A stretch of 64,000 bases of DNA from Pavona decussata. Lineage: Eukaryota. The stretch spans positions 372,001 through 436,000 of the forward strand of contig CDRNST010000072.1 in NCBI GenBank assembly GCA_977016875.1, read 5' to 3'. Numbering within the stretch: position 1 is the first letter of the stretch; each line of letters opens with the position of its first letter. The notes under the pieces are model-generated. The model did no database searches. It was not told where the DNA came from and saw only the letters and a list, made by a program, of their open reading frames with translations. The position numbers were made by a program, and so were the translations under genes. This document shows positions 3,693-64,000 of the stretch, piece after piece.

Positions 3693-3815
3693 ATATTGAT
3701 AAATGCACTAAAGGCATCCACGACTGCAGCAAAAATGCATTCTGCCTGAATACACATAGATCCTTTAATTGCATCTGTAACCCAGGGTTCACTGGTGACG
3801 GACGCTCATGTTCAG
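3693..3815 (+). CDS. Calcium-binding EGF exon, copy 1 (123 bp, phase 1-1)
   Basis: TTTTTAG acceptor and GTAAG donor; [41 protein letters not shown], 6 Cys; differs from the other copies by E>K and G>R. Confidence 0.85.
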
Positions 3816-3837
3816 GTAAGACTTTGGTAGTCTCTTT

Positions 3838-4468: not shown

Positions 4469-4557
4469 TTAATTGGCTATTCCAATTATTAAACAAGTTG
4501 CATTTATTCTTTGTCGAAACGGTTAAATCACTTTTTTGTCCTTTCTTATTTTTTTAG

Positions 4558-4680
4558 ATATTGATGAATGCACTAAAGGCATCCACGACTGCAGCAAAAA
4601 TGCATTCTGCCTGAATACCCATGGATCCTTTAATTGCATCTGTAACCCAGGGTTCACTGGTGACGGACGCTCATGTTCAG
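4558..4680 (+). CDS. Calcium-binding EGF exon, copy 2
   Basis: AG/GT boundaries, 123 bp, [41 protein letters not shown]. Confidence 0.88.
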
Positions 4681-5036
4681 GTAAGACTTTGGTAGTTTCT
4701 TTTTGGTCTTTGTTTTTTGCCAGGTTTTAATCCCCTGGTTAAATCGCAAAATGCAGCAATTTTTGGCCGAATTTAACGATCACGTAAAGTAAGAAAGTAG
4801 ATAACCTGAGGAAAAATATATTTAAAAAAGTTAGGTTGTATTCGAAGTGTAACAATTTTTTACGCTTAATTTCACGTTGAGAAACTGTGTGAACCGATCT
4901 TGGGTAATGTCTTCTAATAAGGCTTTAAATTTATTTCACGTAATGGTAATTAATGGCTAATAAAACATGCTTTTATTTTTCGTTACCTATTTTTTCATAC
5001 TATGACTGAATGACTAGTGTAAACGTATAATACAAA

Positions 5037-8843: not shown

Positions 8844-8932
8844 TTAATTGGCTATTCCAATTATTAAACAAGTTGCATTTATTCTTTGTCGAAACGGTTA
8901 AATCACTTTTTTGTCCTTTCTTATTTTTTTAG

Positions 8933-9055
8933 ATATTGATGAATGCACTAAAGGCATCCACGACTGCAGCAAAAATGCATTCTGCCTGAATACCCATGGA
9001 TCCTTTAATTGCATCTGTAACCCAGGGTTCACTGGTGACGGACGCTCATGTTCAG
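8933..9055 (+). CDS. Calcium-binding EGF exon, copy 3
   Basis: Same peptide and splice sites as copy 2. Confidence 0.88.
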
Positions 9056-9411
9056 GTAAGACTTTGGTAGTCTCTTTTTGGTCTTTGTTTTTTGCCAGGT
9101 TTTAATCCCCTGGTTAAATCGCAAAATGCAGCAATTTTTGGCCGAATTTAACGATCACGTAAAGTAAGAAAGTAGATAACCTGAGGAAAAATATATTTAA
9201 AAAAGTTAGGTTGTATTCGAAGTGTAACAATTTTTTACGCTTAATTTCACGTTGAGAAACTGTGTGAACCGATCTTGGGTTATGTCTTCTAATAAGGCTT
9301 TAAATTTATTTCACGTAATGGTAATCGATGGCTAATAAAACATGCTTTAATTTTTCGTTACCTATTTCTTCATACTATGACTGAATGACTAGTATAAATG
9401 TATAATACAAA

Positions 9412-9573
9412 TATGAAAAGAGCTAACTGGGGAGAAGATAATGGTAGCTGGGGGGTTGATGACCCACAAAAACGTTCATAAAAAATTTCAAACGACCCCC
9501 ATGCTCTCTGGTACGATTTTTTGGTGCCGGCCGTTAGAGCTGAGCCTAATAAATCCCTCAAGTGAGTGACCAA
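9412..9573 (-). pseudogene. N-terminus of tyrosine recombinase, truncated
   Basis: MVTHLRDLLGSALTAGTKKSYQRAW...LALFI overlaps the RT/RH stop as is typical of DIRS/Ngaro; the catalytic domain is absent. Confidence 0.7.
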
Positions 9574-11130
9574 CTCTCCGGTAGAAGGTTCGCTGGTACT
9601 GTTGTTGGGAATTCGTCTGCCTCTGGCGCTAGTTCCTTGAAGTTGTCTACCTGAAATCGGGAGAGGTAATCGGCTTGGCTGTTCTGCAAGCCAGGAACAT
9701 GCCGAGCACGAAATAAAATATTATAACGTAGGCAACTAAGAACCAGGTCACGTAGAAGAACCATTACTGACTTATGCTTAGATGTTTGCTTGCTGATAAT
9801 GTCCACGAGGGCAGCATTATCGGTTAAAAATAGCACGCAGCGGTTAGCCATGCTAGTCCCCCAAATGTGGACAGCAATAACAATGGGAAAAAACTCGAGG
9901 AAAGTAATGTTGAAACTGTGCCATTTGTCAGGAAAAGCGCCGCCAAACCAGTGCTTTCCAAATATCGCACCATAACCTTTTGATGCCGCAGCATCCGTAT
10001 ATAATTTAAGTGTAGAAGAATTGTCCCAGCGATCTGACGAAAAAAATGCCCTGCCATTAAAATTATCTAGAAAGTCTAACCACATGCGTATATCAAGTTT
10101 AGCTTCTCTGTTTAAACGGATGTGGTGATGAGGGCGTGTCAGACCGGTGGTAAGGTCAATTAAGCGGCGTAAAAATGCACGGCCTGGGATGACAACTGAA
10201 CAACAAAAATTCAACGGGCCGATTAAAGATTGCAGCTCGCGCAGAGTAACGGAGCGCTTCTTATAAAATTGATGAAGTAAGGTGCGACATTTGGTAAGAT
10301 TGTCTAGCGGCAACCTGGCCTCCTGATGCACAGAATGAAGCTCTATGCCAGCAAATTGTAAAGTGGTACCTGGTCCCACTGTTTTCTCTTCAGCAATTGG
10401 GACTCCGGGGAATTTGCACATATCGAGAAAATGGTGTAGATCTTTGCTGCATTGATCTTTATTAGGTGCAATAAACAAAAAATCGTCTAAAATATGTAAA
10501 ACGGCAGAGACATGTAAGTCTTGCGTGGCAAGCCACTCCAAAGACGAACTGAATTTTTCGAAAATAGCACAGCTTGACTTCAAACCCATTGCTAGACACC
10601 AATCAAAATAATATTCACTCGCCCATTTGATACCGAGTAAAGGGTACTCCAACGGGTGAACAGGAATAATACGGACTGTGGACTTAATATCTTTTTTAGC
10701 CAAAAAACAACCAGCCCCGAAGTTGTTTAGAATAGAAATGGCATCGCTAATTGTAGCATAATGAACTGATGAGCATTCATCGGGGATGGAATCGTTTACA
10801 GAAGAACCTTTGGGGTATGATAAATTCGTTAGGAGTTTTTTTGGGAACTAAGCCAATGGGTGAAGTGCGAAAAGTAGGATAAGGGGGAGCCTTGAAAGGT
10901 CCCACAACCCTACCAGCTTCGATTTCCTTCATTGATTTTCCTGAAACAACGTCCGGGCTCTGTAGCGCACTTTGTAAATTAGGATACTCAAAAGGAGATA
11001 ATTCGCCGATGTAAGAAATTCGAAAACCGCACCGAAAGCCATTAACTAAAAGGGTTTTAAGGGCTGGAGTATAACCGGCTAATAAAACCTCAAACCGGTC
11101 CGCTTTTACGGGCGTGACTGGTGGGCTGTC
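9558..11130 (-). pseudogene. Ngaro reverse transcriptase-RNase H, frameshifted near 10800; 381-aa open portion 9558..10703
   Basis: SPIGLVPKK, AKKDIKS, CLAMGLKSS, VLHILDDFL, LYTDAA, ITFLEFFPI, TDNAALV, HVPGLQNSQADYLSR. Confidence 0.9.
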
Positions 11131-12210
11131 CAACACTTGGAGTAATAACTGGCGATCCTGATTTGCCAACGTTGGAGCGCTGGTGGGTTGGTGAGACCTG
11201 ACATTGGCTTGCGGGATGTTTGGCATGCATTTAAAGCAAACATGCTCATATTGACATCCCCTACATTGCCTTCCAGCGTGAAACGTCCAGCATGTCCCTT
11301 TTGGGAAATTGTTGTTGGAGGGACGAAAACGTACTCGTGGGTTTACCTTATCCGCACTGGCGGATGATTGAGGTTTGCCCCGAAAATTGGTCATTGCCCG
11401 CAGCCATAACTTCCAGTGGATCTGATCCCATGGGTAGCTTTCGGGGGAGGATTGCCTTAGGTAGTGAAACTGCTCGTCATAAAAAAGCCAGTCCGCCGAT
11501 TTCTGAGACAGATCACGCACCACTTTACAATATTTCATTAGTTTTGGGGCGTCGTCAGAAGCCTTCTCTGAATAAATGGTTACAAAAGTGTTAAAGGCAG
11601 TAAGTCACTGCTGTATATTGGTCACTTTTTTCGGCGTGTGAGAAGGCTCAAGTGTTAGCTGGGGTTGACCCGAGGCACCCGCAGTGGAGGTCATAGAAAG
11701 GAAATACTTTTCACGGGGGGGAGCTACTGACAATAACGCCCCAAAATCTATGTATCCATGAGCCCAGATTTTGGCTTTGATTTTAGCACTAACTCTAGCA
11801 CCTAAATTCATACCGATACTGGTAAATAGCTGACGGGGTTGATCTCCAGCACCGAGGGTAGAAAGTTGTGGATCTGTGGACTGCGTACCTGCGAGTTCTG
11901 TAAGGTTGGTAACCTCTTCGTCTACCACATGAGCAACTTGACGGTCTGCTGTGGGGTGGCTGTCAGAGACATTCGCTAGGGACTGCATGGCCAAGGCATC
12001 TTTGACGGCTGCAGAAACAGCAGCGGTAATCGTGGAGGTGAGCGCTTGAAGATTCAACTGGACCGTCCCCGAGCCTTGAGGAGGCTGGACTGGAGGAGGT
12101 TGAACTTGTAGCATGGTAGCTGGCTCGGCCACTTGCAGATCAGATGCAGGTAACGGGCGAAGACGCTTAGCACGTCTTGCAGGGCCAGCAGAACGCTTCT
12201 TAGGTGGCAT
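11130..12210 (-). pseudogene. Ngaro gag-like ORF1 with premature stop at 11605
   Basis: ORFs 11605..12210 and 10777..11538; WLFYDEQF motif and terminal Cys/His finger. Confidence 0.75.
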
Positions 12211-12261
12211 GATGCAGCGAGAAGAAATAAACTAAACAATAACGGATGTTAGCGGATAGCC

Positions 12262-12795
12262 CTAACCCACATACTTATATTGCCCCTGTCTATTTAGGTG
12301 CACACCATTACGAGCGAGAAATCTCTGGAAAGAATTCCAAAAACCCCGATGACCCCAGAAAAAGGAATAAGGGAGTGCCTCCAGGAACGTCTTAACATAT
12401 CTGTTAAGCGCGCGGACACGCGCGTTAAATACAGGATTGGATCCCAGAAGGGTTTGGCATACACAAACAAGCTTAACATTGTACGTGTCGTGCAAAATGG
12501 TTACTAACTCCTCAATAGCAGAACCCACCACTAAAAGATCAAGCCGGGAAAGATCGTTGGTTCCCAGCTGTAAGATAACTATGTCTGGCGCGAATGAAGC
12601 GACCACGGGGAGGTCGTATTGCATCGTTTTGGCCACAGTTCTACCCCCAACACCATGCCATTTGAATGTAGCAAGGGCAGTCAACAAGAATTGATGGTTA
12701 AGGTTGGGGTTTGCGGCAACAAAGTATTCTAAACGCCTAATGAATGAATGCCCCAGTATTAAAATCTTAGGATGAGCCATGCTAATACTAACCAA
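12262..12795 (-). CDS. Element-encoded SGNH/GDSL hydrolase
   Basis: Blocks ILGHSF, GVGG, LGTNDL and NGVH (DGVH in copy B). Confidence 0.85.
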   Translation of the reverse strand: MVSISMAHPKILILGHSFIRRLEYFVAANPNLNHQFLLTALATFKWHGVGGRTVAKTMQYDLPVVASFAPDIVILQLGTNDLSRLDLLVVGSAIEELVTILHDTYNVKLVCVCQTLLGSNPVFNARVRALNRYVKTFLEALPYSFFWGHRGFWNSFQRFLARNGVHLNRQGQYKYVG

Positions 12796-13131
12796 AAATA
12801 ACTGCTACAACTTGCCTGAAAAATTGTTTTCGCCAGGAGATATACTCGCTGTGATGGTGAAAGCAATAGGGAATTCTTGCCAATGCGACCAGTCCTTTAT
12901 ACTAGCGGACAAATTAGGCTCTCCCACATGATTGGCTGTTATGTCACATGACAGACCACCATCGGATTAACAAATATGTGCCTAGACTACAATTGGTCAA
13001 TGTATCGACATAAATAACATCATGCGTTTACATGATGTTTGGTTAATTGGCTATTCCAATTATTAAACAAGTTGCATTTATTCTTTGTCGAAACGGTTAA
13101 ATCACTTTTTTGTCCTTTCTTATTTTTTTAG

Positions 13132-13254
13132 ATATTGATGAATGCACTAAAGGCATCCACGACTGCAGCAAAAATGCATTCTGCCTGAATACCCATGGAT
13201 CCTTTAATTGCATCTGTAACCCAGGGTTCACTGGTGACGGACGCTCATGTTCAG
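13132..13254 (+). CDS. Calcium-binding EGF exon, copy 4
   Basis: Same peptide and splice sites as copies 2-3; the downstream intron continues without Ngaro. Confidence 0.88.
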
Positions 13255-52219: not shown

Positions 52220-53356
52220 TATGAAAAGAGCTAATTGGGGAGAAGATAATGGTAGCTGGGGGGTTGATGACCCACAAAAACGTTCATAAAAAATTTCAAA
52301 CGACCCCCATGCTCTCTGGTACGATTTTTTGGTGCCGGCCGTTAGAGCTGAGCCTAATAAATCCCTCAAGTGAGTGACCAACTCTCCGGTAGAAGGTTCG
52401 CTGGTACTGTTGTTGGGAATTCGTCTGCCTCTGGCGCTAGTTCCTTGAAGTTGTCTACCTGAAATCGGGAGAGGTAATCGGCTTGGCTGTTCTGCAAGCC
52501 AGGAACATGCCGAGCACGAAATAAAATATTATAACGTAGGCAACTAAGAACCAGGTCACGTAGAAAAACCATAACTGACTTATGCTTAGATGTTTGCTTG
52601 CTGATAATGTCCACGAGGGCAGCATTATCGGTGAAAAATAGCACGCAGCGGTTAGCCATGCTAGTCCCCCAAATGTGGACAGCAATAACAATGGGAAAAA
52701 ACTCGAGGAAAGTAATGTTGAAACTGTGCCATTTGTCAGGAAAAGCGCTGCCAAACCAGTGCTTTCCAAATATCGCACCATAACCTTTTGATGCCGCAGC
52801 ATCCGTATATAATTTAAGTGTAGAAGAATTGTCCCAGCGATCTGACTATAAAAAAATCCCTGCCATTAAAATTATCTAGAAAGTCTAACCACATGCGTAT
52901 ATCAAGTTTAGCTTCTCTGTTTAAACGGATGTGGTGATGAGGGCGTGTCAGACCGGTGGTAAGGTCAATTAAGCGGCGTAAAAATGCACGGCCTAGGATG
53001 ACAACTGAACAACAAAAATTCAACAGGCCGATTAAAGATTGCAGCTCGCGCAGAGTAACGGAGCGCTTCTTATAAAATTGATGAAGTAAGGTGCGACATT
53101 TGGTAAGATTGTCTAGCGATAACCTGGCCTCCTGATGCACAGAATCAAGCTCTATGCCAGCGAATTCTAAAGTGGTACCTGGTCCTACTGTTTTCTCTTC
53201 AGCAATTGGGACTCCGGGGAATTTGCACATATCGAGAAAGTGGTGTAGATCTTTGCTGCATTGATCTTTATTAGGTGCAATTAACAAAAAATCGACTAAA
53301 ATATGTAAAACGGCAGAGACATGTAAGTGTTGCGTGGCAAGCCACTCCAAAGACGA
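52220..53356 (-). mobile_element. Ngaro copy D (RT/RH and YR start only)
   Basis: Near-identical to 9412-10548 with the same host junction TACAAA|TATG. Confidence 0.9.
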
Positions 53357-55173
53357 TCTGACTGCCCAGGTTGCCAACGCTGTTATGGAGACTGGAATCT
53401 TTGACAGATGCCTTCCATGCTTTCTTTTTGCCAATTTGAAACAACCCACTTGTAGAATCACAACCAGTTAAAGCATGGAACGCTGGCATCGATGCGCAGA
53501 CACTCCCACCAAGGTTCTCAGCAATAAGATGGACAGGGATAAAGCTAACCTTATCCTTGACGTCATTCTTGAACCAAATTTCGTCACATTGTATCATCTA
53601 GAATGCATGGATAGCTAATACAGCAACGTCTGTGTCAGGGGACTGGATGACAATCCTGTCTTTAGTGGAAGAAGCTTTCCAAGCATGAAGGATCATCCTT
53701 GTGTCAGCTTCTTCGTGGTCTGATCTTAGCTCTGCAAGGGGATCCGTGCGTCCACAGGTTACAACAACTGCATCTGTTGGATCTTTAAAGCCACCTCCAA
53801 TCACCATTTCTTTACCCGGAAGTAAATATTGTTCACCCAAACAGCACCATTTTTGGCAAAGAAATCTGGAAAGGTTAAGTGTGTTATTCTGGTTGCTGAT
53901 GAACTTTCCCCATCGCTTTGGAACAGGTGTGTGCTTGTTTGTGATTTGGATCCCAAGTGCTCTGCTCAATCTTTCGTTTTCCTTTATGGACTCTCGAACA
54001 TCGTAGCAGTTAAAGCTTATACACTGACCTTGCCGTAGAGGTGTGAAAGGGTAAAGTAAAGTACCTTTCAGCGAGGTCTCCGAATGTGCGGCAACCTGCA
54101 GACTTCAACATCTGGATAAGAGCCATTGCATCAAAATGAATGCTGTTGAAAGGGTACTTTCAGGAAGTCTTCCCTGTGCCTGACACTCTTGTTCAACCTC
54201 GGCCATTAGAGAACTTTTTGTCGTTTTCCGCAAAGCACCATCTGCGTGTGCCAATGCAAAGGGCACAGTTGACAGTTCATAGCTCAGGACCTCTTTCACA
54301 TCAACATCACGACACTTTTCAGCAATCAGAAGTCTACCGAACAAATTCCGTCTGTGCACATGATGTGACTGGTTTTTGCCATAGAGGCAAATATTTTCAC
54401 ATTGACTTTCGATATCTTGCTCCAAAAAGATACCTCACAACTGTCCATTCTTTGTATGGTAAACTTCTTTGCTTCTTCTGTTCCTGTCTTGAAACAGTCA
54501 ATGAGCTGCGTTGCAGAATCGTTTGGCATAACTACGCAAGTGGCGATGTTTCGGTAGAGGAATTGGATCTTCTTTCGATGCCTCACTCAAATCAAAAGGG
54601 TTTGACATGGTAGTAGCAATGGTGTTGATCAGCTTCTGAACATCAGCTCTATTCCTCTTTACTCTCTGAGAACTTGCCTCCTTGTGGGTTCCAATCTTGT
54701 CAGAGTCTTCAAGGTTGCAAAGTTGCTTGGTTGCAGAAGTAATCTCAGCCCTCTTGTGACTAGTTAGAAACCATCTGTCTAATGCAGAAGCATTTTGTGT
54801 TAAGTCAACAATACCTCCTCTATAGTCTTGCTGTCGAGGTTGATGGTTTGTTCCAAGGCCATGTCGGTCCAAACTTGGCTGAAACGTTGACTAAATCTAC
54901 ATACTGGATGGTTGCCGTTTAGGAACTCTTCGTGAACTTCTGGAGCGTGAGTGGGAAGCAAATGCATATCTGCCAAGTAGATTGGGAGCCACCTGCAATT
55001 GAAAAGAGCAAGAGATCATAACTAGGAGACACGTCAAAGGGGATAACGTTAGAAAATTAACAAATCGCAAATGCGCTTTGGCAGACACTAACAACAAACG
55101 TATTTTATTAATGCGTGTGACGAAGATTTTATCCCATATTATCCCAATTCAGATATATTGAAATTCAGTTTTT
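53355..55173 (-). mobile_element. Partial duplicate of the Academ element
   Basis: Near-identical to about 15194-17034; similarity stops abruptly at the Maverick terminus. Confidence 0.9.
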
Positions 55174-55218
55174 AGTAGTATAGATATTGGGGGTACGAGC
55201 GCAACCCCCCTTTTCCAA

Positions 55219-55402
55219 TTACATCTGAAAATCTCCACACGAATTGTATGAAATTTCTTCTGGTCACCTTTTTTACATCTGAAAATCTCCACACGAATTG
55301 TATGAAATTTCTTCTGGTCACCTTTTTTACATCTGAAAATCTCCACACGAATTGTATGAAATTTCTTCTGGTCACCTTTTTTACATCTGAAAATGTCCAC
55401 AC
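55219..55402. repeat. 54-bp tandem repeat (about 3.4 copies) in the Maverick terminal region
   Basis: Unit TTACATCTGAAAATCTCCACACGAATTGTATGAAATTTCTTCTGGTCACCTTTT. Confidence 0.95.
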
Positions 55403-55479
55403 TAATTACATCGAATTTTGACTGAGGGGCTACGAGCGCACCTCATTGAATCTTCATACAATTTTGTGTGAAGATTGAA

Positions 55480-55620
55480 TTAGATTCTTCTCTTAATCTC
55501 TTGGTCTCTTCTTCTCTTAATGTCTTTGTGTCCGTAGGCGAAACTTGTCACACCGTTTTCATGTATGTATCTCTTATCATCAAAGCAACTTAGTGATGTT
55601 TTTCCCTTTGTGGCTTTCCT
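55480..55620 (-). pseudogene. C-terminal stub of protein-primed DNA polymerase B
   Basis: KTSLSCFDDKRYIHENGVTSFAYGHKDI matches the characteristic Polinton pPolB C-terminus; no upstream polymerase motifs are present. Confidence 0.8.
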
Positions 55621-55878
55621 GTTAATCAATATACTTATGACCAACATCCGGTTGTGAGGAATTTGCATACATGTTCATTGAAGTGAAACGTGCAGTCACG
55701 CTAACCACAACCGCTCATGTAAAAATATCCTGTGATGTAAACGAATTATTTTTCCTGTTTTCACCAAATACACATGCGTACTAAAATTTAACATGAGTGT
55801 TACCGGTATGAAATACCACATGTAAAAGCTTTTTTAAACTGTAACATATAAATAGGCTGTTTGGTTGTGATATAAATT

Positions 55879-56368
55879 GGTTGTGTATGCTCAGTAGTTA
55901 ACCATTGGAAAAAGCAGGGGCCTTTGGTTACCGAACTGTATACACAACCCCTATAGAATGGTGAAAAACCCCTGCCGTCATTCTATAGGTTGACTGAATA
56001 ATAAAATAATAAAACTGTCGCCCTAAGATCGGTGGCAAGCTGTTGGGTAGAGCTTAGTTGGGTTAATCCCTTCAGAAGTGCCGGTTCAGCCCACACCGTA
56101 GGGCGATAAATACAAAATATGGCTTCAATCAAGGAGTCTGATAGTGCTCAAAAGAGCGGTGTGGTGGAGGGCAAAGCCTTGTAAAGTGGGTAAAATAAAA
56201 TAAATAAAATAAATAAAAAAACCAAAAAAAACCTCTCATGAGGGACAGGGTGGGAAAAATTAAAAAAGAGTAAAGTCCCTCATGAGAGGTCTGGTGGCCA
56301 CCAGTTTTGGTTTTTTATTACATCTCGTGACGATAGCTGTTTTTTCTATTCACGGTCATGAATAGAAA
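55879..56368 (+). ncRNA. Candidate structured RNA/ssDNA module (hairpin cluster with kissing loops)
   Basis: At least five successive stem-loop domains; wobble positions read G-U on the + strand. Transcription is not demonstrated. Confidence 0.4.
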
Positions 56369-56395
56369 GTCTGTTCAAAATATCTCACAACGCTT

Positions 56396-56881
56396 TTACG
56401 CAAAGATCATATCGTATTTTTTCTCAAACCTGTCAACAATCGGCGAATTGTCGAGAATGAAATCGTCATTTTGTTGAAGTTTTGACAACAGTTCTGACTC
56501 GTTGAATTGACCAGATCTGAGAATGTCTTTTATCTGAATCAACAGATGGCCATACGTTTGAAAAGCATACTGAACTTGGTGCAGTCTGATTTCAAGGTTT
56601 TTGTGTTTCATATACGCTTGAATAAGCACACTCGCAGACGCGATGGCAATTAGACTGACTCCTGCAGTCGCTATCGAACTGGCTAAACCACCGGTGGCAA
56701 ACACAATGCTTGAGATATTGCCTGCCAACTGCCACGCTTTCAATCGTTTGTAAGCAGCCTTGTACATCCACATCTTTTTGTGGTACGTTCTGTAATACGA
56801 TTTCAGTTCAGTTATCTGTGATTCGGTCAACTCTTCAGATATGTGGTTGAAATTGATGACCGATTTTTTTGTTTTTACCAT
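56396..56881 (-). CDS. Maverick small protein with a central hydrophobic hairpin (putative membrane-active protein)
   Basis: Intact 161-aa ORF; ISSIVFATGGLASSIATAGVSLIAIASASVLI flanked by helical charged regions. Confidence 0.75.
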   Translation of the reverse strand: MVKTKKSVINFNHISEELTESQITELKSYYRTYHKKMWMYKAAYKRLKAWQLAGNISSIVFATGGLASSIATAGVSLIAIASASVLIQAYMKHKNLEIRLHQVQYAFQTYGHLLIQIKDILRSGQFNESELLSKLQQNDDFILDNSPIVDRFEKKYDMIFA

Positions 56882-56890
56882 CTTTATTAT

Positions 56891-59305
56891 TTACTCAAGA
56901 TAAGATCTATTTCTTTTTTCCTCAAGCAAAATCCTGTGAAAGTCTAAACTGTCGACGTCAATAAACTTATCAACCAAACCGATTTTATTGACGAAGCCGT
57001 CATAGTCGATTTCAAATTGGTTACTTTGAAAATTAATAGTTCCGCTTAATGTTTTGGTTGCGTGAGCATTATAATTGCTTAGCGCCATCTTGTACAGACG
57101 TTGGGTGGCATCATAACATATCCAAATGCACAACTGTTTATTTTTGAAATCGCTTGTGAAACTGATTGACTGTTTTCCTCTTAGAAAGTCGATCTGAATT
57201 TGATCAGCAGTAATTAAAAATCTTGGATAAAATTTTATGTGAAACGCTCTCGTGTTAGACCAACTGATTGTTCCTGTTTTGGTTTCATCATGCAAAAAAG
57301 ACATGAAGAATGTAAAGCTGCTTGATTGATTAAAAACTTTTGTTGTATGGATACGTGTTTTTGTACTGAGTTTCAAACCATTTTTGACGTCATAGTCGTT
57401 GATAAAACGATCTGTTTCAAGGATAAAATTAGGTAGAACACTATTTATCACAACACCGCTAACACCCTTGATGAGACCAAAGCGTGATGTTTCTAATAAA
57501 TCATAGAATTCGGAAAATATACTTCTGTAAGCATGACCTTTCGTGTGATATGACACGGAATCCAAACTTGACTTATTGACAGCGTCTCCATCATCGATCG
57601 GGTCGGAAAGATGCACTATTCTTTTGTTATTCATGTCTAGTTCAGTCTGCATTTTCATGTCTCCATTTTCGTACTTGAACATAACATTATCCAACCCATC
57701 GTAAATATCTGGATACACACTATCCGACCAATCTTTTACACCGTAAACAACCAGATGGCACTGCACCGGTGTCGCTGTAGCTGTGCCGTGCATCGTCAAA
57801 TAGATGTAATCTGGAGTTTGTTTGCTGTTGTTATTGAATTGAACCAATAGCTTGCTATAATCAGTGAAATCACGCTGTGTTGATTTGTGGATATACGCAG
57901 AAGATGCAGTACATGATAATTGAATATTGGTCATTTCCGGTGGGTAGAATTCAAACATGATAGTGTATGTTCCTATAGCGAGAGAATAAAGATTGAAACC
58001 TATCCTTGATCGATAATTATTTGTGCCTGCATCCTTTGTCAAAACTATGCTGTAAGCCTTTTTATTTTGATGTGGAGATTCATTGAAATCAACAATACCA
58101 GTCACCGTGATATTGTACTCCGAACTGCTCTCGTCACTATCTATAAGATATTTGAATTGATTTGTTTTATGACTGCTGACAAGATGACTCTGCTCCAATC
58201 TGTCCTCAAAATATTTTTTGGTAGTAGCGTCATTATCATCAGTCGGTTTGGCGATGGATTTAATCTGTTTTTCATTCATATCGAGGTTGCCTGTCATTGG
58301 GATACTTCCATCTTTTTTCAAATATGCACTCAAATCACTTCCACCAGATGGTATTTTAGCTATTTCTGTATCAACATATGCTTTAGTGGAAGCATCATTG
58401 GGATCGGAAGGATTTCCAAGAACGATTATTTTATGACCTCTCATATCTAAATCACCACCAAGAGCATTTGGTGTCAACCTGTTGAGAAAGTTATGGTCAA
58501 CGTAGTATTTATTGACAGCATCATTATTATCAACAGGTTGAGCCATACCTTTGATTCTATGATTGTCCATATTGAGGTCACTATTAGATACTTTTTGTAA
58601 ATATTTTGTATCACAAAAACCTAAATTGACAACATCAGATGAATTTTGAATATTGTACCCAAGGTTGGTGATTTGTTGATTACCAATATTAAGATCACCA
58701 GTCATTGCAACACTGCCATCTTTTTTCACATACGCAGATAAATCAGTTGATGGTATTTTTTTAATCTCATCATCCACATATTTTTTATTCGCCGCTTGAT
58801 CGTTATTATTGGGTTTTACCACATTAAGATCAAAAAATGTTTTCCGCCCGGTAATATGTTGTTCAGTCGATGTTACCATAATTTCGCTTTTTTTACGGCC
58901 ACCATAGCCGTCAAAGTTTTGCAAATCCGGTACATGAAGGTGAATATTGTCATAAGACTGATGTTCAGTCATTAATCTAACACTATTGAAGCTACCAGCA
59001 CCGTCTGGTATGTCCTGCAGATAGACACTGTTGGTATGAACGCTACCCGTGTTGCTGTAAATTACTGCTTTATCGGCTTGCACATTACCAGGGGAATTAT
59101 CTAACGATTGAATTTGACTATTTGTGACTGCATCATTGGGATTGGTTCCTTGTTTGACATTTACAAGTTTTTTGTTTTGAATATCGTAATTTCCATTTTC
59201 GTCTAACTTAAAACCAACCCCCGGAAAACCCCTCTCACCTCTCTCTCCTTTTCCTGAAGGATAATTGAAATTTAAAACTCCGTTGTAAAAACTCATTTTA
59301 TTCAA
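56891..59305 (-). CDS. Maverick fibre/spike-like protein (collagen triplets, repeated neck motifs, C-terminal beta-rich domain)
   Basis: Intact 804-aa ORF; GKGERGERGFPG; seven repeats of G(D/N)LDMxxxxIxxLxxPxxxxDAxxKxYVD type; two copies of DLSAY(V/L)KKDGS. Confidence 0.75.
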   Translation of the reverse strand: MNKMSFYNGVLNFNYPSGKGERGERGFPGVGFKLDENGNYDIQNKKLVNVKQGTNPNDAVTNSQIQSLDNSPGNVQADKAVIYSNTGSVHTNSVYLQDIPDGAGSFNSVRLMTEHQSYDNIHLHVPDLQNFDGYGGRKKSEIMVTSTEQHITGRKTFFDLNVVKPNNNDQAANKKYVDDEIKKIPSTDLSAYVKKDGSVAMTGDLNIGNQQITNLGYNIQNSSDVVNLGFCDTKYLQKVSNSDLNMDNHRIKGMAQPVDNNDAVNKYYVDHNFLNRLTPNALGGDLDMRGHKIIVLGNPSDPNDASTKAYVDTEIAKIPSGGSDLSAYLKKDGSIPMTGNLDMNEKQIKSIAKPTDDNDATTKKYFEDRLEQSHLVSSHKTNQFKYLIDSDESSSEYNITVTGIVDFNESPHQNKKAYSIVLTKDAGTNNYRSRIGFNLYSLAIGTYTIMFEFYPPEMTNIQLSCTASSAYIHKSTQRDFTDYSKLLVQFNNNSKQTPDYIYLTMHGTATATPVQCHLVVYGVKDWSDSVYPDIYDGLDNVMFKYENGDMKMQTELDMNNKRIVHLSDPIDDGDAVNKSSLDSVSYHTKGHAYRSIFSEFYDLLETSRFGLIKGVSGVVINSVLPNFILETDRFINDYDVKNGLKLSTKTRIHTTKVFNQSSSFTFFMSFLHDETKTGTISWSNTRAFHIKFYPRFLITADQIQIDFLRGKQSISFTSDFKNKQLCIWICYDATQRLYKMALSNYNAHATKTLSGTINFQSNQFEIDYDGFVNKIGLVDKFIDVDSLDFHRILLEEKRNRSYLE

Positions 59306-59308
59306 TGT

Positions 59309-59959
59309 CTAGATAATTTGTGTAAAATTTTTTGCGTTAAACTTTCGGGGTTTGTCGGAATACAAAAATGTGTGAGGCTCATTTGTTGCGTATTCGTATA
59401 TTTTTTCGTTTATCCCCAAATCTCTGCAAATTGAATTCTTTTCTCTTGTGTTTGGAAAATCGTAAATGCAGTAATGGGAACAGTTTAATCTAATCGTTTT
59501 ATCCGTGTTGTAAAAAGACTGAGAAAGATAGACGCAACTGCAGTTTTTGTTTCGAGAGTTTGTGAAATAATTCCTAATTTCCCTATCGTTAGCTGTTCCA
59601 GTGTTCAAGTAATCGTCGAAAATTACCAACTTTTGATGCTCGTCGTTCATTTCCGACAATGGCAAAATATCTCCGTTACTGGCTTCAATCATGTCATAAC
59701 CGTATTTTTTTGAAAAAGGTTCGAAAAAATCTAACAAAAATCGATACTTATCCTGTTCCAAGTTTTTTGCATACAAGTATATCTTATCGTAATACAAAAG
59801 TGGTTTCATTATCATGTGAACCAAAAGGTTGGTTTTTCCACAACCGCTAGGCGCACAAATCAACATTCTAAAGCATCTATCGGGCATGAATTCACATCCA
59901 GGTATCTGTCGAAAATTGTTATCACTATAACCTTTGACATCGTAGTTTGGTATTTCCAT
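59309..59959 (-). CDS. A32/FtsK-like genome packaging ATPase
   Basis: Walker A ICAPSGCGKT, Walker B LVIFDD, arginine-finger region SRNKNCSCVYLSQSF, IRLNC. Confidence 0.92.
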   Translation of the reverse strand: MEIPNYDVKGYSDNNFRQIPGCEFMPDRCFRMLICAPSGCGKTNLLVHMIMKPLLYYDKIYLYAKNLEQDKYRFLLDFFEPFSKKYGYDMIEASNGDILPLSEMNDEHQKLVIFDDYLNTGTANDREIRNYFTNSRNKNCSCVYLSQSFYNTDKTIRLNCSHYCIYDFPNTREKNSICRDLGINEKIYEYATNEPHTFLYSDKPRKFNAKNFTQII

Positions 59960-60014
59960 TTACTAAATACCAAACAAAATATTTTTTCGATTACGGTTTG
60001 TTTTTGTTGCAAAT

Positions 60015-60050
60015 CGCTATACGACACGCTATACGACACGCTATACGACC
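60015..60050. promoter_or_regulatory. 12-bp direct repeat x3 in a divergent intergenic region
   Basis: CGCTATACGACA x3 (last copy ends in C) between the ATPase start (59959, minus) and the PZ-like start (60098, plus). Confidence 0.55.
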
Positions 60051-60097
60051 CGTTTTTATATTTATTTTTACAAAAAATTTTGTTGAGCAAAGATAAA

Positions 60098-61120
60098 ATG
60101 AGTTTGCAAAAATGGAAAGAAATGGCCGAAAAAAGGACGAAAGCCGGCCAAACTGCCAACGCAATTAGGGAAAGTATTAAACAAAAGAAAATCGCTGATA
60201 CAATGGGAGAAGCTGAAGCAGAAAAACTTTTCAGACCAATAACATCCGGTTTGAAAGATTTGAAACTGACTCAGGCTAAACCTGTAAAAAGGATTTTCAG
60301 AAAAAAAGCGCCAGCAGGTTTTCCCCCAGATTATGGAATAAATATTGAGGATGAAGGAATTCCAGATTACAATCTAGAAGATTTGTTTGATGAGGGAGTT
60401 CAACCACAAGATACAAAACAACTTGTTCCAAAACCACCCTCTTACGACGATGTCTTGAAAGATTTGGAAACAGGAAAAAAGAAAATGTCGATCGATCCGG
60501 AGTTTATGCCGGAACTAGAGACAATACCTGAAGATCCTCCGGAATACGATGAAGATGAAGTTCCGGATTATTCAATTTTCGATGAAGACAGAATAAATGA
60601 GACTTTGGACCAACTTGGTTTATCAAATTATGATGATATTGAAGCACAACTCAGCAGGGTTGATATGACAGAAAAAACTAGACAGAATTATTTAACAAAG
60701 AAAATCGAAGAGGCGACAAAAGAAAGACGACGATTTTCGGGATACAAAACAGACATTACAAAGAAGCTGAACAAAGGTGAGATTAGTCAGGCTGAAGCTC
60801 AGTTTGGAAGAAAAATTATTGACGATATGAGAAAAGTTTTAAACGACTATATTGGTTACCACAAAAGCAAGTTGAAGAGTATCAAAGGTTCGGGTTTGAG
60901 AAGATCCGCAGGTAGGCAAACCAAACGGGGTGGAAACGCTTTTTTCATAAATCCAGACAATGCTATAAAAAAGTTGCAGTTAATCGTCGGTTCGATTGAA
61001 GCAGGAAATAACAGCATTGAGTTAAGAAACATGGGTGTAGCAATTTTGGATATTTTATTGAAAAACAACATTATCAACAAACCTGTGTACAATAATTTTT
61101 ACAAAAACTTTTTCGGATAA
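60098..61120 (+). CDS. Polinton PZ-like conserved protein
   Basis: Likely start MSLQKWKE at 60098; C-terminal KLQLIVGSIEAGNNS...ILDILL motif; acidic Pro-rich middle. Confidence 0.75.
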   Translation: MSLQKWKEMAEKRTKAGQTANAIRESIKQKKIADTMGEAEAEKLFRPITSGLKDLKLTQAKPVKRIFRKKAPAGFPPDYGINIEDEGIPDYNLEDLFDEGVQPQDTKQLVPKPPSYDDVLKDLETGKKKMSIDPEFMPELETIPEDPPEYDEDEVPDYSIFDEDRINETLDQLGLSNYDDIEAQLSRVDMTEKTRQNYLTKKIEEATKERRRFSGYKTDITKKLNKGEISQAEAQFGRKIIDDMRKVLNDYIGYHKSKLKSIKGSGLRRSAGRQTKRGGNAFFINPDNAIKKLQLIVGSIEAGNNSIELRNMGVAILDILLKNNIINKPVYNNFYKNFFG

Positions 61121-61130
61121 ATAAGTAAAT

Positions 61131-61889
61131 ATGGAAAGACAATTGGTTTTATCTTCTCACAGCGTTAAAAAACAAGGTAAGAATAAACCCAGTGATTTCA
61201 CAATCAAATACAATGAACCGATAAGACTAAACCCAAACAACACGTATGTTCTTGGTCTTGACAGAATTATAACAATGTCGTTCACTTGGTTTAATATCAA
61301 TTCGGATTTGAAAAACCAGCTCATAAAATACTCTTCAGACGGAGGAAAAACATGGAAAGACATTAATTTTCCACCCGGAACGTGGAACTATGTTGATTTT
61401 AACGATCACATCAAGGAAGAGACAAAAACAGGAACCGCAAGCAACCCCTCATATCCGATTACATTGGAATTCGACAACACAACATATAAAACAATCATTA
61501 CATTGGCAGCAAACTACCAACTCGATTTGAGACCGTCAAATTTTAACGACTTGATCGGTTTTAACAAAAAAATTTTGACCAGTACTGAAAATACTGGTGA
61601 CTACACACCAAATCTTAGTCAAGACACGGAGATTCTCAACATTCACTGCGATTTGATTTCAGAAAGTCTTGTCGATGGGGATGAAACAGACATCTTGTAT
61701 TCTTTTGGGACAAACGACTTGACACCTTCATATGCTTTTACTAAAGAGCCTTTGAGGGTTCAATTTAACCCAGTCAACAAGTATCTAATCAACAACATAC
61801 GGATATACATCACCGATGGACAGAGAAGGATAATCGATTTGAATAATGCAGATACCGCATTTTCATTAATTTTGAAAGAAAAAATATAA
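61131..61889 (+). CDS. Minor capsid protein (penton, single jelly roll)
   Basis: NKPSDFTIKYNEPIRL, FPPGTW, LNIHCDLISESLVDG, INNIRIYITDGQRRIIDLN. Confidence 0.88.
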   Translation: MERQLVLSSHSVKKQGKNKPSDFTIKYNEPIRLNPNNTYVLGLDRIITMSFTWFNINSDLKNQLIKYSSDGGKTWKDINFPPGTWNYVDFNDHIKEETKTGTASNPSYPITLEFDNTTYKTIITLAANYQLDLRPSNFNDLIGFNKKILTSTENTGDYTPNLSQDTEILNIHCDLISESLVDGDETDILYSFGTNDLTPSYAFTKEPLRVQFNPVNKYLINNIRIYITDGQRRIIDLNNADTAFSLILKEKI

Positions 61890-61907
61890 AAGGTTGTAAT
61901 AATAAAA

Positions 61908-62378
61908 ATGCAGCCGTATAATTACAAAAGAATTTTTCATCCGAAACTCGGAAGATTTGTTTTCCAACACAAAGGATCGGGTTTGATTGTTGATAATATT
62001 TTCAAACCGATGAAAAAAATGTTGGCAACAGCGACAAAAGCTGTTTTGAAACCTCTTGCTAAAAAAGCTTTGAAATCGGGAATAGAAAGTGCTGGCGACA
62101 AAATCGGAAAGAAAGCTGTCGACGTTGCTGGTAAAAAATTTTCTGAAAGTCCAGGTTTAACGTTTTTGAAAGAGATGGGTAAAAAAACTAAAGACTCCAC
62201 CGGACCAACGGTCAGAGATTACAACGGAATGTTGAATTCAATGATCCAATTTTCACAACCGAAGGTAGGGGTTTCACAACCAAAGGTAACCCAACCCGCC
62301 GAAGAAGATTATAATTTGATTTTGAATCGAATGATTTCCGGAAGCGGGATGAAAAAAAGGAGAAAAAATAAAAAATAA
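61908..62378 (+). CDS. Basic virion core-like protein with putative protease sites
   Basis: 156 aa, Lys-rich amphipathic segment, HKGSG and ISGSG motifs, basic C-terminal tail. Confidence 0.7.
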   Translation: MQPYNYKRIFHPKLGRFVFQHKGSGLIVDNIFKPMKKMLATATKAVLKPLAKKALKSGIESAGDKIGKKAVDVAGKKFSESPGLTFLKEMGKKTKDSTGPTVRDYNGMLNSMIQFSQPKVGVSQPKVTQPAEEDYNLILNRMISGSGMKKRRKNKK

Positions 62379-62405
62379 AAAATAAAATTTTCGGTATAAA
62401 TAAAA

Positions 62406-63698
62406 ATGATGAGTTTCAGAACAAGTGAAAAACTTCAAAGATACGAAATGGTTAGATTTTCTCTTGACAATGTTATTGAGGTGCCCGGAAACAACAATTC
62501 TCAGAAAAAAACAGGCTATAAATTTACAATCAACGACAGATCGACTTTTTTCGATTATTTTAACGGGTATTTTGAGGTTACCAAGGAGTTACAGAAAAAA
62601 GCTGACGGTGCGGGTTATGCAGCCGCTGATAGAATCACCATGATCAATGGAGCACATTCTCTAATCAAACACATGGTGATCAAATCCGCAGGAAAAATCG
62701 TTTACGAAAGTGACAACATTCACAGAATCACAAATGCTAAAAATTTACTTGAGTATAGCGACGATTTCAGTAGATCGGTTGCTAAAAACAGTTTTTGGTA
62801 TCTTGATACAAACGGATCAACAGCAAACACAAATACAGGTTTTGAAGCAAGACGAATTTTAACTCAAGCTACAAACAATGATGGAAGTGGCGGTGCAAAA
62901 AGCATCAATGAAATCATTCCATTAAATAGGTACAGTTTTTTCGAGGAATTGGAAGACAAGATGATTCCACCCATGCAGCTCACAATTGAAATTACATTGA
63001 ACGATGATTCTGAATTGATTCACAAAGCGGCCGCTGCAGACGACGGTCGTGTTGTTGTGACTCGATTTTATCTTTGGCTTCCAAAAATGGTTCCAAAGGA
63101 TAGTGAATTTAATGAATTTGTAAAAGATTTTTTGAAACCGAGCAAATGGGTTTACATGAGAGATTTATACAACCAGAGTGCAAATACAAGAGCTGTTCAA
63201 AACATGTTTCAAATCAGTCCCGCCATCGACAATGTAAAACATGTATTTGTTTATTTGCAGCGAACCGATGGCCCAAACAACGAGGAATCTGAGAGAACAC
63301 CGTATGTTTACGATGCTTTCAAATTGAATGCTGCAGATTCAAACTCCAGTCTTGCATCGTGCCGACTAGAATATGGAAACAGTACTTTTTATCCTGAATT
63401 GGAGTACGATGCAGATTCAAAAGTCAGAATCTTTAACGATCTGATGTCTTATGCTTACAGAAAAAACGATCTCAACACTGGAACGCAGTTAAATCTCCAC
63501 AATTTCGATGCTCTTTACGGTCTTGTTTATTTCGATTTGACTTTCCAAAAAGAGACTGTCACACGAGACCCAAAACAACTTATTTTAAATTTTAGATTAA
63601 ACACTGCTCCGACAGCCAATGTTAGAGCACATGCCATCGTTTTTCATGAAAGTGAAATAATTGTGGATAAAAGAGGAAACGAACTTATGATTGTTTGA
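62406..63698 (+). CDS. Major capsid protein (double jelly roll, PY/hexon-like)
   Basis: Intact 430-aa beta-rich ORF in the morphogenetic cluster; NGAHSLI, NLLEYSDDF, IPLNRYSFF, KHVFVYLQ, YPELEY, LVYFDLTFQ. Confidence 0.85.
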   Translation: MMSFRTSEKLQRYEMVRFSLDNVIEVPGNNNSQKKTGYKFTINDRSTFFDYFNGYFEVTKELQKKADGAGYAAADRITMINGAHSLIKHMVIKSAGKIVYESDNIHRITNAKNLLEYSDDFSRSVAKNSFWYLDTNGSTANTNTGFEARRILTQATNNDGSGGAKSINEIIPLNRYSFFEELEDKMIPPMQLTIEITLNDDSELIHKAAAADDGRVVVTRFYLWLPKMVPKDSEFNEFVKDFLKPSKWVYMRDLYNQSANTRAVQNMFQISPAIDNVKHVFVYLQRTDGPNNEESERTPYVYDAFKLNAADSNSSLASCRLEYGNSTFYPELEYDADSKVRIFNDLMSYAYRKNDLNTGTQLNLHNFDALYGLVYFDLTFQKETVTRDPKQLILNFRLNTAPTANVRAHAIVFHESEIIVDKRGNELMIV

Positions 63699-63743
63699 GT
63701 TGGAAAAAATTTTTTTATTTTATTTGATTCAAATAAAATAACG

Positions 63744-64000
63744 ATGACACAATTGTATGAAATCAACATTTCACTTTCTGAAAATCAGAAAAAAACTTTG
63801 AGTAAAGCCTATCATGAAAAGGAAACGATTACATTGCGTTTGAAAAACGACGCTCTATCTGGGTCCGATACTCTTTTAGTACCAAAAACAACTGTAAACA
63901 GGTTGGAAAAGAATCGAAAACTAAACAAGGGAATGGATATCAAACTCGCAAAGTCAAACATTAGAAAACAAGTTGGTGGATCGCTTTTGAGTTCGATTTT
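63744..64000 (+). CDS. Maverick basic protein, partial (runs off the window)
   Basis: Manual translation MTQLYEINISLSENQKKTLSKAYHEKETITLRLKNDALSGSDTLLVPKTTVNRLEKNRKLNKGMDIKLAKSNIRKQVGGSLLSSI with no stop. Confidence 0.75.
   Translation, partial: MTQLYEINISLSENQKKTLSKAYHEKETITLRLKNDALSGSDTLLVPKTTVNRLEKNRKLNKGMDIKLAKSNIRKQVGGSLLSSI

What the first reader, a model, noticed from the sequence alone, without database searches (positions are those of the whole stretch)
55879..55989. Symmetric kissing-loop hairpin pair in the Maverick non-coding region
Seen: two abutting hairpins. Stem 1 is GGTTGTGTAT (55879-88) with ATACACAACC (55940-49), plus inner TAACCA/TGGTTA and GG/CC. Stem 2 is CCTATAGAATG (55950-60) with CATTCTATAGG (55979-89), extended by G-U, U-G and G-C. 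Both loops are 12 nt and start with five A: AAAAAGCAGGGG (55909-20) and AAAAACCCCTGC (55964-75). The two 7-mers are exact complements. Wobbles work on the + strand and would be A-C mismatches on the minus strand. Inference: a selected loop-loop RNA (or ssDNA) structure that could pair within one molecule or oligomerise. Its place in an element with a packaging ATPase recalls the interlocking loops of phi29 pRNA or an adenovirus VA-like RNA. I know of no such RNA described for Mavericks.
Basis: partly seen in the sequence, partly recalled or inferred. Interest (0 to 1): 0.85.

Follow-up and report, generated by a model that had tools for sequence, protein, structure and literature searches.

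The report
Hairpin pair with complementary loops
Two adjoining hairpins whose tips can pair with each other sit in the non-coding end region of a virus-like Maverick element; the structure is real and very unlikely to be chance, but whether it works as an RNA is not yet shown.

Summary
H1 (55879-55949) and H2 (55950-55989) abut. Each has a 12-nt loop built as G, five A, a 7-mer, then C. The two 7-mers are exact reverse complements, and they are the only complementary match of 6 nt or more among unpaired stretches in 500 nt. The fold beats all shuffles (z -4.8). The loop design has a chance probability of 0.0025 (any register) to 1e-7 (same register and same prefix), both post hoc.

The strand argument from wobble pairs is weak, because the minus strand folds almost as well. 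Other hints favour the + strand: more exposed loops, an A/T-rich word that precedes every gene start of the element, and purine skew.

The pair belongs to a cluster of palindromes (H1-H4) in a 1.2-kb stretch between a truncated retroelement and the first ORF of an adintovirus-like element. That element has an A32-type ATPase, a fibre-like gene and a capsid-like gene.

No Rfam family matches, so this is not pRNA and not VA RNA.

Conservation is therefore untested.

Best reading (0.35): a + strand structured RNA domain whose loops pair between molecules.

The parts
55175..56395 (.). Non-coding stretch between the break in a retroelement copy and the first ORF of the Maverick-like element. It is the probable left sub-terminal region of the element; the left boundary is inferred, not proven.
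   Evidence: Homology to the other retroelement copy (16861-17035) is 98.9% and stops at 55174/5. No ORF of 50 aa or more spans 55700-56395. None of nine small ORFs here is a called protein in the collection.
55219..55407 (.). 54-nt tandem repeat, 3.5 copies, flanked by a 15-nt direct repeat (55189-55203 and 55426-55440).
55445..55483 (.). A further strong hairpin (12-bp core).
   Evidence: the 71-nt segment 55420-55490 folds at -24.2 kcal/mol, z -4.5. Also, I1.
55846..55884 (+). Two copies, 24 nt apart, of a 15-nt word that begins ATATAAAT. The second copy runs into the first bases of H1. It contains the A/T-rich word found before every gene start of the element.
   Evidence: (D6)
55879..55949 (+). 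Hairpin H1: 71 nt, 24 pairs, one 2-nt bulge, three small internal loops and a 12-nt apical loop.
   Evidence: -26.4 kcal/mol, z -3.6 on +; -26.0 kcal/mol, z -4.2 on -
55909..55920 (+). Loop 1: five A, then the 7-mer GCAGGGG (55914-55920), closed by a G-C pair.
   Evidence: unpaired probability 0.99 on +
55950..55989 (+). Hairpin H2: 40 nt, 14 pairs (11 Watson-Crick, then G-U, U-G and G-C), 12-nt loop. It abuts H1 with no linker.
   Evidence: -14.1 kcal/mol, z -5.0 on +; -12.4 kcal/mol, z -3.8 on -
55964..55975 (+). Loop 2: five A, then the 7-mer CCCCTGC (55969-55975), closed by a G-C pair. This 7-mer is the exact reverse complement of the loop-1 7-mer.
   Evidence: (I13)
55990..56015 (+). A-rich spacer (58% A) with two AATAAA words at 56000 and 56008.
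56016..56108 (+). Hairpin H3: 93 nt, 31 pairs. It is 7.6 kcal/mol more stable on the + strand.
   Evidence: -39.4 kcal/mol (z -3.4) on +; -31.8 kcal/mol (z -3.2) on -
56119..56184 (+). 21-codon small ORF directly after an ATAAAT word. Coding status is unknown.
56212..56320 (.). Palindrome H4. It has a 16-bp perfect stem (56231-56246 / 56275-56290), a small GC hairpin (56291-56304), and an outer stem made of an A-run and a T-run. T-runs therefore follow the structure on both strands. It resembles a two-way terminator placed between the + strand unit and the leftward genes.
   Evidence: (I3, I9), 28, 56, 58, 64: z -6.8 on +, z -8.9 on -
56343..56368 (-). 10-bp hairpin about 27 nt downstream of the stop of the 161-aa ORF.
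   Evidence: (I14)
56396..56881 (-). 161-aa ORF, the last gene of the leftward block. It is open and has the same length as its relatives.
   Evidence: cluster of 42 members at 90% identity or more
56891..59305 (-). Fibre-like ORF, 801 aa from the first ATG.
   Evidence: Phage_T7_tail N-terminal domain, E 2.7e-13. Phage tail-fibre PHROGs. Weak tail-fibre chains in PDB.
59309..59959 (-). A32-type (FtsK/HerA) packaging ATPase, 216 aa, open. Relatives are 213-216 aa.
   Evidence: PF04665, E 3e-8. 2209 relatives, all carrying PF04665.
60098..63698 (+). Rightward gene block: ORFs of 340, 252, 156 and 430 aa. The 430-aa ORF (62406-63698) is capsid-like.
   Evidence: The model is poor (pLDDT 47), but Foldseek hits are almost all jelly-roll capsid proteins, including adintovirus, virophage and giant-virus ones.

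Best explanation
H1-H2 is the 5' structured domain of a non-coding transcript read from the + strand of the element's left sub-terminal region. The transcript would start at or just after the ATATAAAT words (55846-55884). It would end either in the A-rich spacer after H2 or at the two-way terminator-like palindrome H4, about 440 nt downstream.

Each hairpin presents a 7-mer at the 3' side of a 12-nt loop behind a run of five A. The two 7-mers are complementary, but the arms are unequal (24 and 14 pairs) and abut without a linker.

Shown: the structure, the loop design and its improbability, and the + strand bias of the sequence signals. Inferred: that the region is transcribed, that the loops pair, and that pairing is between molecules. 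What the assembly does (scaffold, decoy or packaging aid) is unknown.
For: - Fold statistics support a real structure.
- The loop 7-mers are the only complementary match of 6 nt or more among all unpaired stretches of 55840-56340.
- Chance is 0.0025 in any register and about 1e-7 for a shared 5-nt prefix plus in-register complementarity.
- H1 and H2 are not duplicates of each other. The only shared pieces are GAAAAA in direct orientation and the 7-mer in inverted orientation. A simple direct or inverted duplication does not explain this design.
- The loop-loop duplex is worth -13.4 to -14.1 kcal/mol. As an ordinary nested helix it would cost 15 kcal/mol (-26.3 against -41.6), so it can only be an add-on contact.
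- On the + strand both 7-mers are unpaired (0.99 and 0.92), against 0.60 and 0.74 on the minus strand.
- The word ATAAA/TAAAT lies within 20 nt upstream of 7 of 8 gene starts of the element. Background is 7.5%, P 1e-7. In 55175-56395 it occurs 15 times on + and twice on -, including at 55848 and 55872 just before H1.
- The + strand of 55846-56320 has the purine and A-over-T skew that all seven genes show on their sense strand. 55175-55845 has the opposite skew.
- H3 is 7.6 kcal/mol more stable on +.
- H4 carries T-runs on both sides, as expected where two transcription units converge.
Against: - There is no evidence of conservation or covariation, because I did not fetch related copies.
- There is no transcript evidence.
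- The minus strand folds nearly as well. The hairpins could therefore be plain DNA palindromes.
- The A/T-rich word is short, overlaps poly(A)-signal-like hexamers and sits in A/T-rich DNA. Its promoter role is assumed.
- All probabilities are post hoc, on a feature picked by eye.
- No known RNA family matches.
- That the region belongs to the element at all rests on parsimony. There is one break in the retroelement at 55174/5, and the right end of the element lies outside the window.
Confidence: 0.35

Rival explanations
1. DNA-level cis element. The palindromes and the repeated GGTTGTG word mark the sub-terminal region of the linear element as a site for proteins or for single-stranded DNA intermediates, in replication, packaging recognition or integration. 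The hairpin potential, or hairpins formed on displaced single strands, is what matters, and no RNA is involved.
For: - Both strands fold about equally well.
- The single-stranded DNA fold is also significant (z -3.95).
- Five of the window's 13 GGTTGTG words lie within 300 bp (55650-55949), in both orientations, and two of them form the base of H1.
- The region lies about 700 bp from the probable terminus, next to tandem repeats. That is where linear protein-primed genomes keep cis signals (established knowledge, recalled).
- Loop complementarity works equally on single-stranded DNA of either strand.
Against: - Long imperfect stems with bulges, and loops built to a common plan, are not what duplex protein-binding sites look like.
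- The + strand bias of loop exposure, of the gene-start word and of the skew has no role in this reading.
- The GGTTGTG enrichment is modest window-wide: 13 against 7.2 expected, with 5 of 100 shuffles reaching it.
Confidence: 0.25
2. Transcript-end signals. The palindrome cluster stops or processes transcripts that enter the non-coding end region. This would resemble the stem-loop plus U-tract terminators of yeast linear virus-like elements, or the palindromes at transcript ends in Mimiviridae. H1-H2 would be spare or upstream members of that set, and the loop match would be incidental.
For: - H4 and the 10-bp hairpin at 56343-56368 lie 27-185 nt after the stop of the last leftward gene, and H4 is followed by T-runs on both strands.
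- Stem-loops near stop codons or inside terminal repeats form mRNA 3' ends in yeast linear elements (PMC6211774).
- Palindromes end transcripts in Mimiviridae (PMC4402537).
Against: - H1-H2 lie more than 400 nt beyond the gene end and beyond H4, H3 and an AATAAA on the minus strand at 56319-56314.
- Co-directional genes in the element are 3-28 nt apart with no hairpins between them, so hairpins are not the general gene-end signal here.
- This reading does not explain the loop design.
Confidence: 0.15
3. No function. The hairpins are by-products of mutation in non-coding repeat-rich DNA, for example template switching that creates or perfects inverted repeats. The loop match would be one such event.
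For: - Perfect inverted repeats are five times more frequent than in shuffles across the whole window, mostly in transposon DNA. This genome therefore makes palindromes readily.
- The window holds stronger palindromes with no evident role, for example 36179-36278.
- All the statistics are post hoc.
Against: - The common loop plan (G, five A, 7-mer, C, with the 7-mers inverted but the prefix direct) is not the product of one simple duplication or inversion.
- Four strong modules are packed into 450 nt and separated by A-rich spacers.
- The element looks young and intact: all seven ORFs are open, three have the length of their relatives, and relatives reach 99% identity. Decay is therefore an unlikely source.
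Confidence: 0.2
4. Small-RNA precursor. H1 (71 nt, 24 pairs) is cut into microRNA-like or siRNA-like small RNAs. These would either serve the element or be used by the host to silence it.
For: H1 has the size and bulge pattern of a precursor hairpin. The only weak Rfam echoes on H1 are microRNA precursor models, all far below threshold.
Against: - The scores are far under the gathering cut-offs (18 against 54 bits).
- There is no extended basal stem.
- H2 is too short.
- This reading ignores the loop design.
Confidence: 0.05

Closest known systems
phi29-type packaging RNA (pRNA)
   Same: - It is a small structured RNA encoded near the left end of a linear, protein-primed dsDNA genome that also encodes a packaging ATPase.
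- Two loops of one molecule are complementary and pair between molecules to build a ring.
Both points are established knowledge, recalled.
   Different: - There is no match to the Rfam model at E up to 10 and no phage DNA similarity.
- Here two independent abutting hairpins stand in place of a three-way junction with one hairpin loop and one internal loop.
- There are 7 complementary bases rather than about 4.
- The ATPase is A32-type and the capsid is of the jelly-roll lineage. No RNA motor part is known for that lineage.
- No portal protein was seen.
Adenovirus VA RNA
   Same: It is a short, highly structured non-coding RNA of a related virus lineage. Adintovirus and Maverick elements share capsid and protease types with adenoviruses (PMC8502044).
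   Different: - There is no Rfam match.
- The shape is two separate hairpins, not one long imperfect stem with a central domain.
- There is no T-run on the + strand until 56305.
- The position is at the genome end rather than mid-genome.
Loop-loop (kissing) dimerisation elements, such as the dimer initiation hairpins of retroviral RNAs and domain III of bicoid mRNA
   Same: Exposed loop bases flanked by unpaired purines pair between molecules. Bicoid uses two different complementary loops on one molecule. Both points are recalled knowledge.
   Different: Those act on RNA genomes or on localised mRNAs. Here the genome is dsDNA and the RNA, if it exists, is non-coding. There is no sequence or family link.
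Stem-loop transcript-end signals of linear cytoplasmic elements and giant viruses (yeast pGKL elements; the Mimiviridae 'hairpin rule')
   Same: These are A/T-rich compact genomes with palindromes at transcript ends, some inside terminal repeats and some followed by a U-tract (PMC6211774; PMC4402537). H4 fits this picture.
   Different: H1-H2 are far from any gene end. Genes inside the element lack such hairpins. The loop complementarity has no counterpart.

Membership tests
phi29-type pRNA (Rfam family) | Match to the family's covariance model | tested here: not met
   No pRNA hit at E up to 10 in 1.4 kb or in 151 nt, nor at gathering score in the whole window.
phi29-type pRNA (Rfam family) | Two loops of one molecule are complementary, so that they pair between molecules | tested here: met
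   7-nt exact complementarity. Both loops are predicted open on +. Pairing between molecules itself is inferred.
phi29-type pRNA (Rfam family) | Three-way junction with a separate helix that holds the ATPase | tested here: not met
   The fold is two abutting hairpins with no third helix.
phi29-type pRNA (Rfam family) | Binds the portal and is needed for DNA packaging | not testable with these tools
   No portal-like gene was seen among the window's ORFs. The functional test lies outside this report.
Adenovirus VA RNA | Match to the family's covariance model | tested here: not met
   No hit.
Adenovirus VA RNA | T-run terminator directly after the RNA | tested here: not met
   The first run of four or more T on the + strand after H1 starts at 56305.
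Adenovirus VA RNA | Internal polymerase III promoter boxes | not tested
Stem-loop transcript-end signals (yeast linear elements, Mimiviridae) | Palindrome close to the stop codon of the gene it ends | tested here: not met
   H1-H2 lie more than 400 nt from the nearest gene end. The feature is met only by 56343-56368 and H4.
Animal microRNA precursor | Hairpin of about 60-70 nt with about 22 or more pairs, plus discrete small RNAs | tested here: inconclusive
   H1 fits by size. The microRNA models score far below their cut-offs. Small-RNA reads are not available here.
Maverick/Polinton (adintovirus-like) element, as the setting | A32-type packaging ATPase | tested here: met
   PF04665, E 3e-8, with 2209 relatives carrying the same domain on contigs of up to several Mb.
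Maverick/Polinton (adintovirus-like) element, as the setting | Jelly-roll capsid protein | tested here: inconclusive
   The 430-aa ORF has a poor model (pLDDT 47). Foldseek hits are nearly all capsid proteins, but TM-scores are 0.2-0.3. There is no sequence hit in PDB.
Maverick/Polinton (adintovirus-like) element, as the setting | Protein-primed PolB, rve integrase, terminal inverted repeats and a target-site duplication | not testable with these tools
   The element runs off the window at 64000. I did not fetch the rest.

The most novel reading that the evidence does not exclude
It would serve virion assembly or genome packaging. That would make it a functional analogue of phage pRNA arising independently in the jelly-roll-capsid, A32-ATPase lineage.
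Probability: 0.06. Interest if true: 0.9.

Novelty: new variant of a known kind. Interest (0 to 1): 0.5.

Why it matters
My paper searches turned up no structured non-coding RNA or nucleic-acid structure described for Mavericks/Polintons or adintoviruses. Their gene expression and packaging signals are essentially unknown.

If the hairpin pair is conserved and transcribed, it would be the first such element. It would also give a handle on how these widespread animal virus-like elements express or organise their end regions.

Two other observations are useful on their own for annotating these elements. Every gene start carries the same A/T-rich word. The non-coding end region is organised into palindrome modules with a + strand bias.

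If the pair proves not to be conserved, the finding reduces to a curiosity of palindrome-rich DNA.

Tried and rejected
- Rfam at gathering score on the whole window, and at E up to 10 on 1.4 kb and on 151 nt. Only sub-threshold chance echoes came back: a CRISPR repeat model and microRNA and snoRNA models.
- blastn of 55840-56340 against 50,697 phage records. No match.
- Self-search of 55000-56400 against the window. There is no second copy of the hairpin region.
- Test of whether H1 descends from the weaker GGTTGTG...CACAACC pair at 55650-55712. That hairpin is not significant (z -1.1), and local alignment of the two stretches is at shuffle level.
- Test of whether H2 is a copy of H1. It is not.
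- The loop-loop helix as an ordinary nested helix. It is 15 kcal/mol worse, so I rejected it.
- Absence of T-runs on the + strand between H1 and H4 as a sign of polymerase III. Not significant (P 0.42).
- Bacterial-type promoter and terminator scan. At background level except for the small GC hairpin plus T-run at 56291-56304.
- Looking for called proteins that overlap the hairpins, so as to read conservation through protein searches. None of nine small ORFs is in the collection.
- Structure prediction of the 430-aa ORF. Low confidence, used only as a hint.
- Literature. My searches returned no paper describing a Maverick or adintovirus non-coding RNA.

Full report
**Observation.**
- As RNA, the + strand folds into two abutting hairpins. 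H1 is 55879-55949 (24 pairs) and H2 is 55950-55989 (14 pairs).
- The fold is -41.6 kcal/mol with z -4.8, and none of 200 dinucleotide shuffles folds as well.
- Each hairpin is significant alone, at z -3.6 and -5.0.
- The exact arms are 10 and 11 bp (I11 and I10).
- Both apical loops are 12 nt. Each is closed by a G-C pair and starts with five A. The remaining 7-mers (55914-20 and 55969-75) are exact reverse complements (I13, 28, 29).

**Chance.**
- Two random 12-mers of local composition share 7 or more complementary bases with probability 0.0025.
- A shared 5-nt prefix plus in-register complementary 7-mers has probability about 1e-7.
- In the 501-nt fold of 55840-56340 this is the only complementary match of 6 nt or more between unpaired stretches.
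- H1 and H2 are not copies of each other. They share only GAAAAA in direct orientation and the 7-mer in inverted orientation. One duplication or inversion does not produce the design.
- All these numbers are post hoc, on a feature chosen by eye. Even so, the window holds only 21 comparable perfect inverted repeats and only this one abutting pair, so the multiple-testing burden is small.

**Strand.**
- There are three G-U pairs on +.
- The mirrored structure on the minus strand still gives -37.7 kcal/mol. That strand's own fold gives -39.7 kcal/mol, z -4.65.
- The 501-nt region is highly structured on both strands, z -6.0 and -6.8. Single-stranded DNA also folds significantly.

Other hints do lean to the + strand.
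- The two 7-mers are predicted unpaired at 0.99 and 0.92 on +, against 0.60 and 0.74 on -.
- H3 is 7.6 kcal/mol more stable on +.
- The + strand of 55846-56320 has the A-over-T and purine skew that all seven genes of the element show on their sense strands. 55175-55845 has the opposite skew.
- A short A/T-rich word (ATAAA/TAAAT) lies within 20 nt upstream of 7 of 8 gene starts. Background is 7.5%, P 1e-7. In the non-coding stretch it occurs 15 times on + and twice on -. Two copies sit just before H1 (55848, 55872), inside a 15-nt word repeated 24 nt apart (D6, 34, 41).

**Setting.**
- A retroelement copy (51363-55174) matches another copy at 13043-17035, and the match stops abruptly at 55174/5.
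- New sequence follows: a 54-nt tandem repeat (55219-55407), a strong hairpin (55445-55483) and a local cluster of GGTTGTG words.
- Next come four palindrome modules separated by A-rich spacers: H1, H2, H3 (56016-56108) and H4 (56212-320).
- Three consecutive 111-nt windows here rank among the dozen most stable of the whole 64 kb.
- Four of the window's 21 perfect inverted repeats fall in this 1.9% of the window.
- H4 has a 16-bp perfect stem, a small GC hairpin, and an A-run and T-run that leave T-runs after it on both strands. It sits where a + strand unit and the leftward genes would converge.
- The leftward genes are a 161-aa ORF, a fibre-like 801-aa ORF with a phage T7 tail-fibre N-domain, and an A32-type ATPase.
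- Rightward ORFs follow. They include a 430-aa protein whose weak model finds almost only jelly-roll capsid proteins, adintovirus ones among them.
- The ATPase has 2209 relatives and the 430-aa ORF 1374, all on long ENA contigs.
- In the part of the element inside the window I saw no broken gene. All seven ORFs are open, and the three that could be compared have the length of their relatives.
- The element runs off the window at 64000. Its polymerase, integrase, right end and terminal repeat are therefore unseen.
- That the hairpins lie inside the element, rather than in a third piece of DNA, is inferred from the single break at 55174/5 and from the shared word and skew.

**Mechanism.** My best reading (confidence 0.35) is a + strand non-coding transcript whose 5' domain is H1-H2.
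- The loops present their 7-mers behind five A.
- The loop-loop helix would add about -13 to -14 kcal/mol. It cannot replace the hairpins, because the nested alternative is 15 kcal/mol worse.
- H1 is much longer than H2 and there is no linker, so the two loops of one molecule should not reach each other. This is inference.
- Pairing between molecules, giving dimers or larger assemblies, is the natural outcome.
- What such an assembly does is open.

**Rivals.**

| Reading | Confidence |
|---|---|
| DNA-level cis element of the sub-terminal region | 0.25 |
| No function | 0.20 |
| Transcript-end signals | 0.15 |
| Small-RNA precursor | 0.05 |

The transcript-end reading has precedents in yeast linear elements (PMC6211774) and Mimiviridae (PMC4402537). 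It fits H4 and the 56343-56368 hairpin well, but not H1-H2.

**Comparison with known systems.**
- The design works like phage pRNA or other loop-loop dimerisation elements, but it is not a member of any known family.
- No Rfam family matches at E up to 10. There is no three-way junction and no phage similarity.
- It is not VA RNA either: there is no model match, the shape differs, and no T-run follows.
- My paper searches found no structured RNA described for Mavericks or adintoviruses. The adintovirus paper does note fibre genes similar to phage tail fibres (PMC8502044).

- My own tools liken this element to adintoviruses, which are described as animal-tropic.
- Conservation and covariation, the decisive descriptive evidence, are therefore untested.
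- Many copies exist. The neighbouring 161-aa protein sits in a cluster of 42 members at 90% identity or more, one of them on 13 contigs.
- I fetched no adenovirus comparator.
- I tested no polymerase III box, because that would have needed letters from memory.
- I propose no altered transcripts.
- The N runs (35922-36057 and 42406-42617) were left as they are.

- The patterns were read off the window.

**Verdict.**

| Item | Verdict |
|---|---|
| Observation | confirmed |
| Membership in pRNA or VA RNA | not met |
| Function | unproven |
| Interest | 0.5 |

Noticed in passing
56891-59305 (-): An 801-aa ORF with a phage T7 tail-fibre N-terminal domain (E 2.7e-13) and repeated matches to phage tail-fibre families. 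It is a fibre-like gene lying between the ATPase gene and the non-coding end region.
   Followed up: partly
56396-64000: Every one of 8 gene starts is preceded within 20 nt by an A/T-rich ATAAA/TAAAT word, and genes are only 3-28 nt apart. This compact, virus-style layout suggests very short leaders or a shared start signal.
   Followed up: partly
62406-63698 (+): A 430-aa ORF that is very conserved (77% identity or more among the 120 best of 1374 relatives). It has no Pfam or PDB sequence match. A weak structure model hits almost only jelly-roll capsid proteins (adintovirus, virophage, giant viruses).
   Followed up: partly
60098-61120 (+): A 340-aa ORF with a weak MIF4G-like match (E 0.004, below Pfam's cut-off).
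   Followed up: no
56119-56184 (+): A 21-codon small ORF directly after an ATAAAT word, between H3 and H4.
   Followed up: no
3600-17035 and 51363-55174: An array of retroelement copies 4.2-4.4 kb apart, with weak RVT_1 and RVT_thumb hits, plus a truncated copy that ends exactly where the Maverick-like sequence begins. Inverted repeats at 13763-14175 / 22289-22717 bound one unit.
   Followed up: partly
33532-38207: 438-nt inverted repeats (97% complementary) bound a roughly 4.7-kb unit. It contains an N run (35922-36057, left untouched) and a 32-bp perfect palindrome at 36179-36278, the most stable 111-nt window of the whole sequence.
   Followed up: no
30660-30733 (+): A tRNA-Ser (anticodon TGA) gene, the only Rfam match at gathering score in the window.
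   Followed up: no
27207-28013 (+): A 268-aa ORF with a chemoreceptor-like PDC sensor domain (PF22673, E 3.3e-13). This is unexpected in what otherwise looks like animal transposon-rich DNA.
   Followed up: no
55650-55949: Five of the window's 13 GGTTGTG words cluster within 300 bp in both orientations. Two of them form the base of H1.
   Followed up: partly
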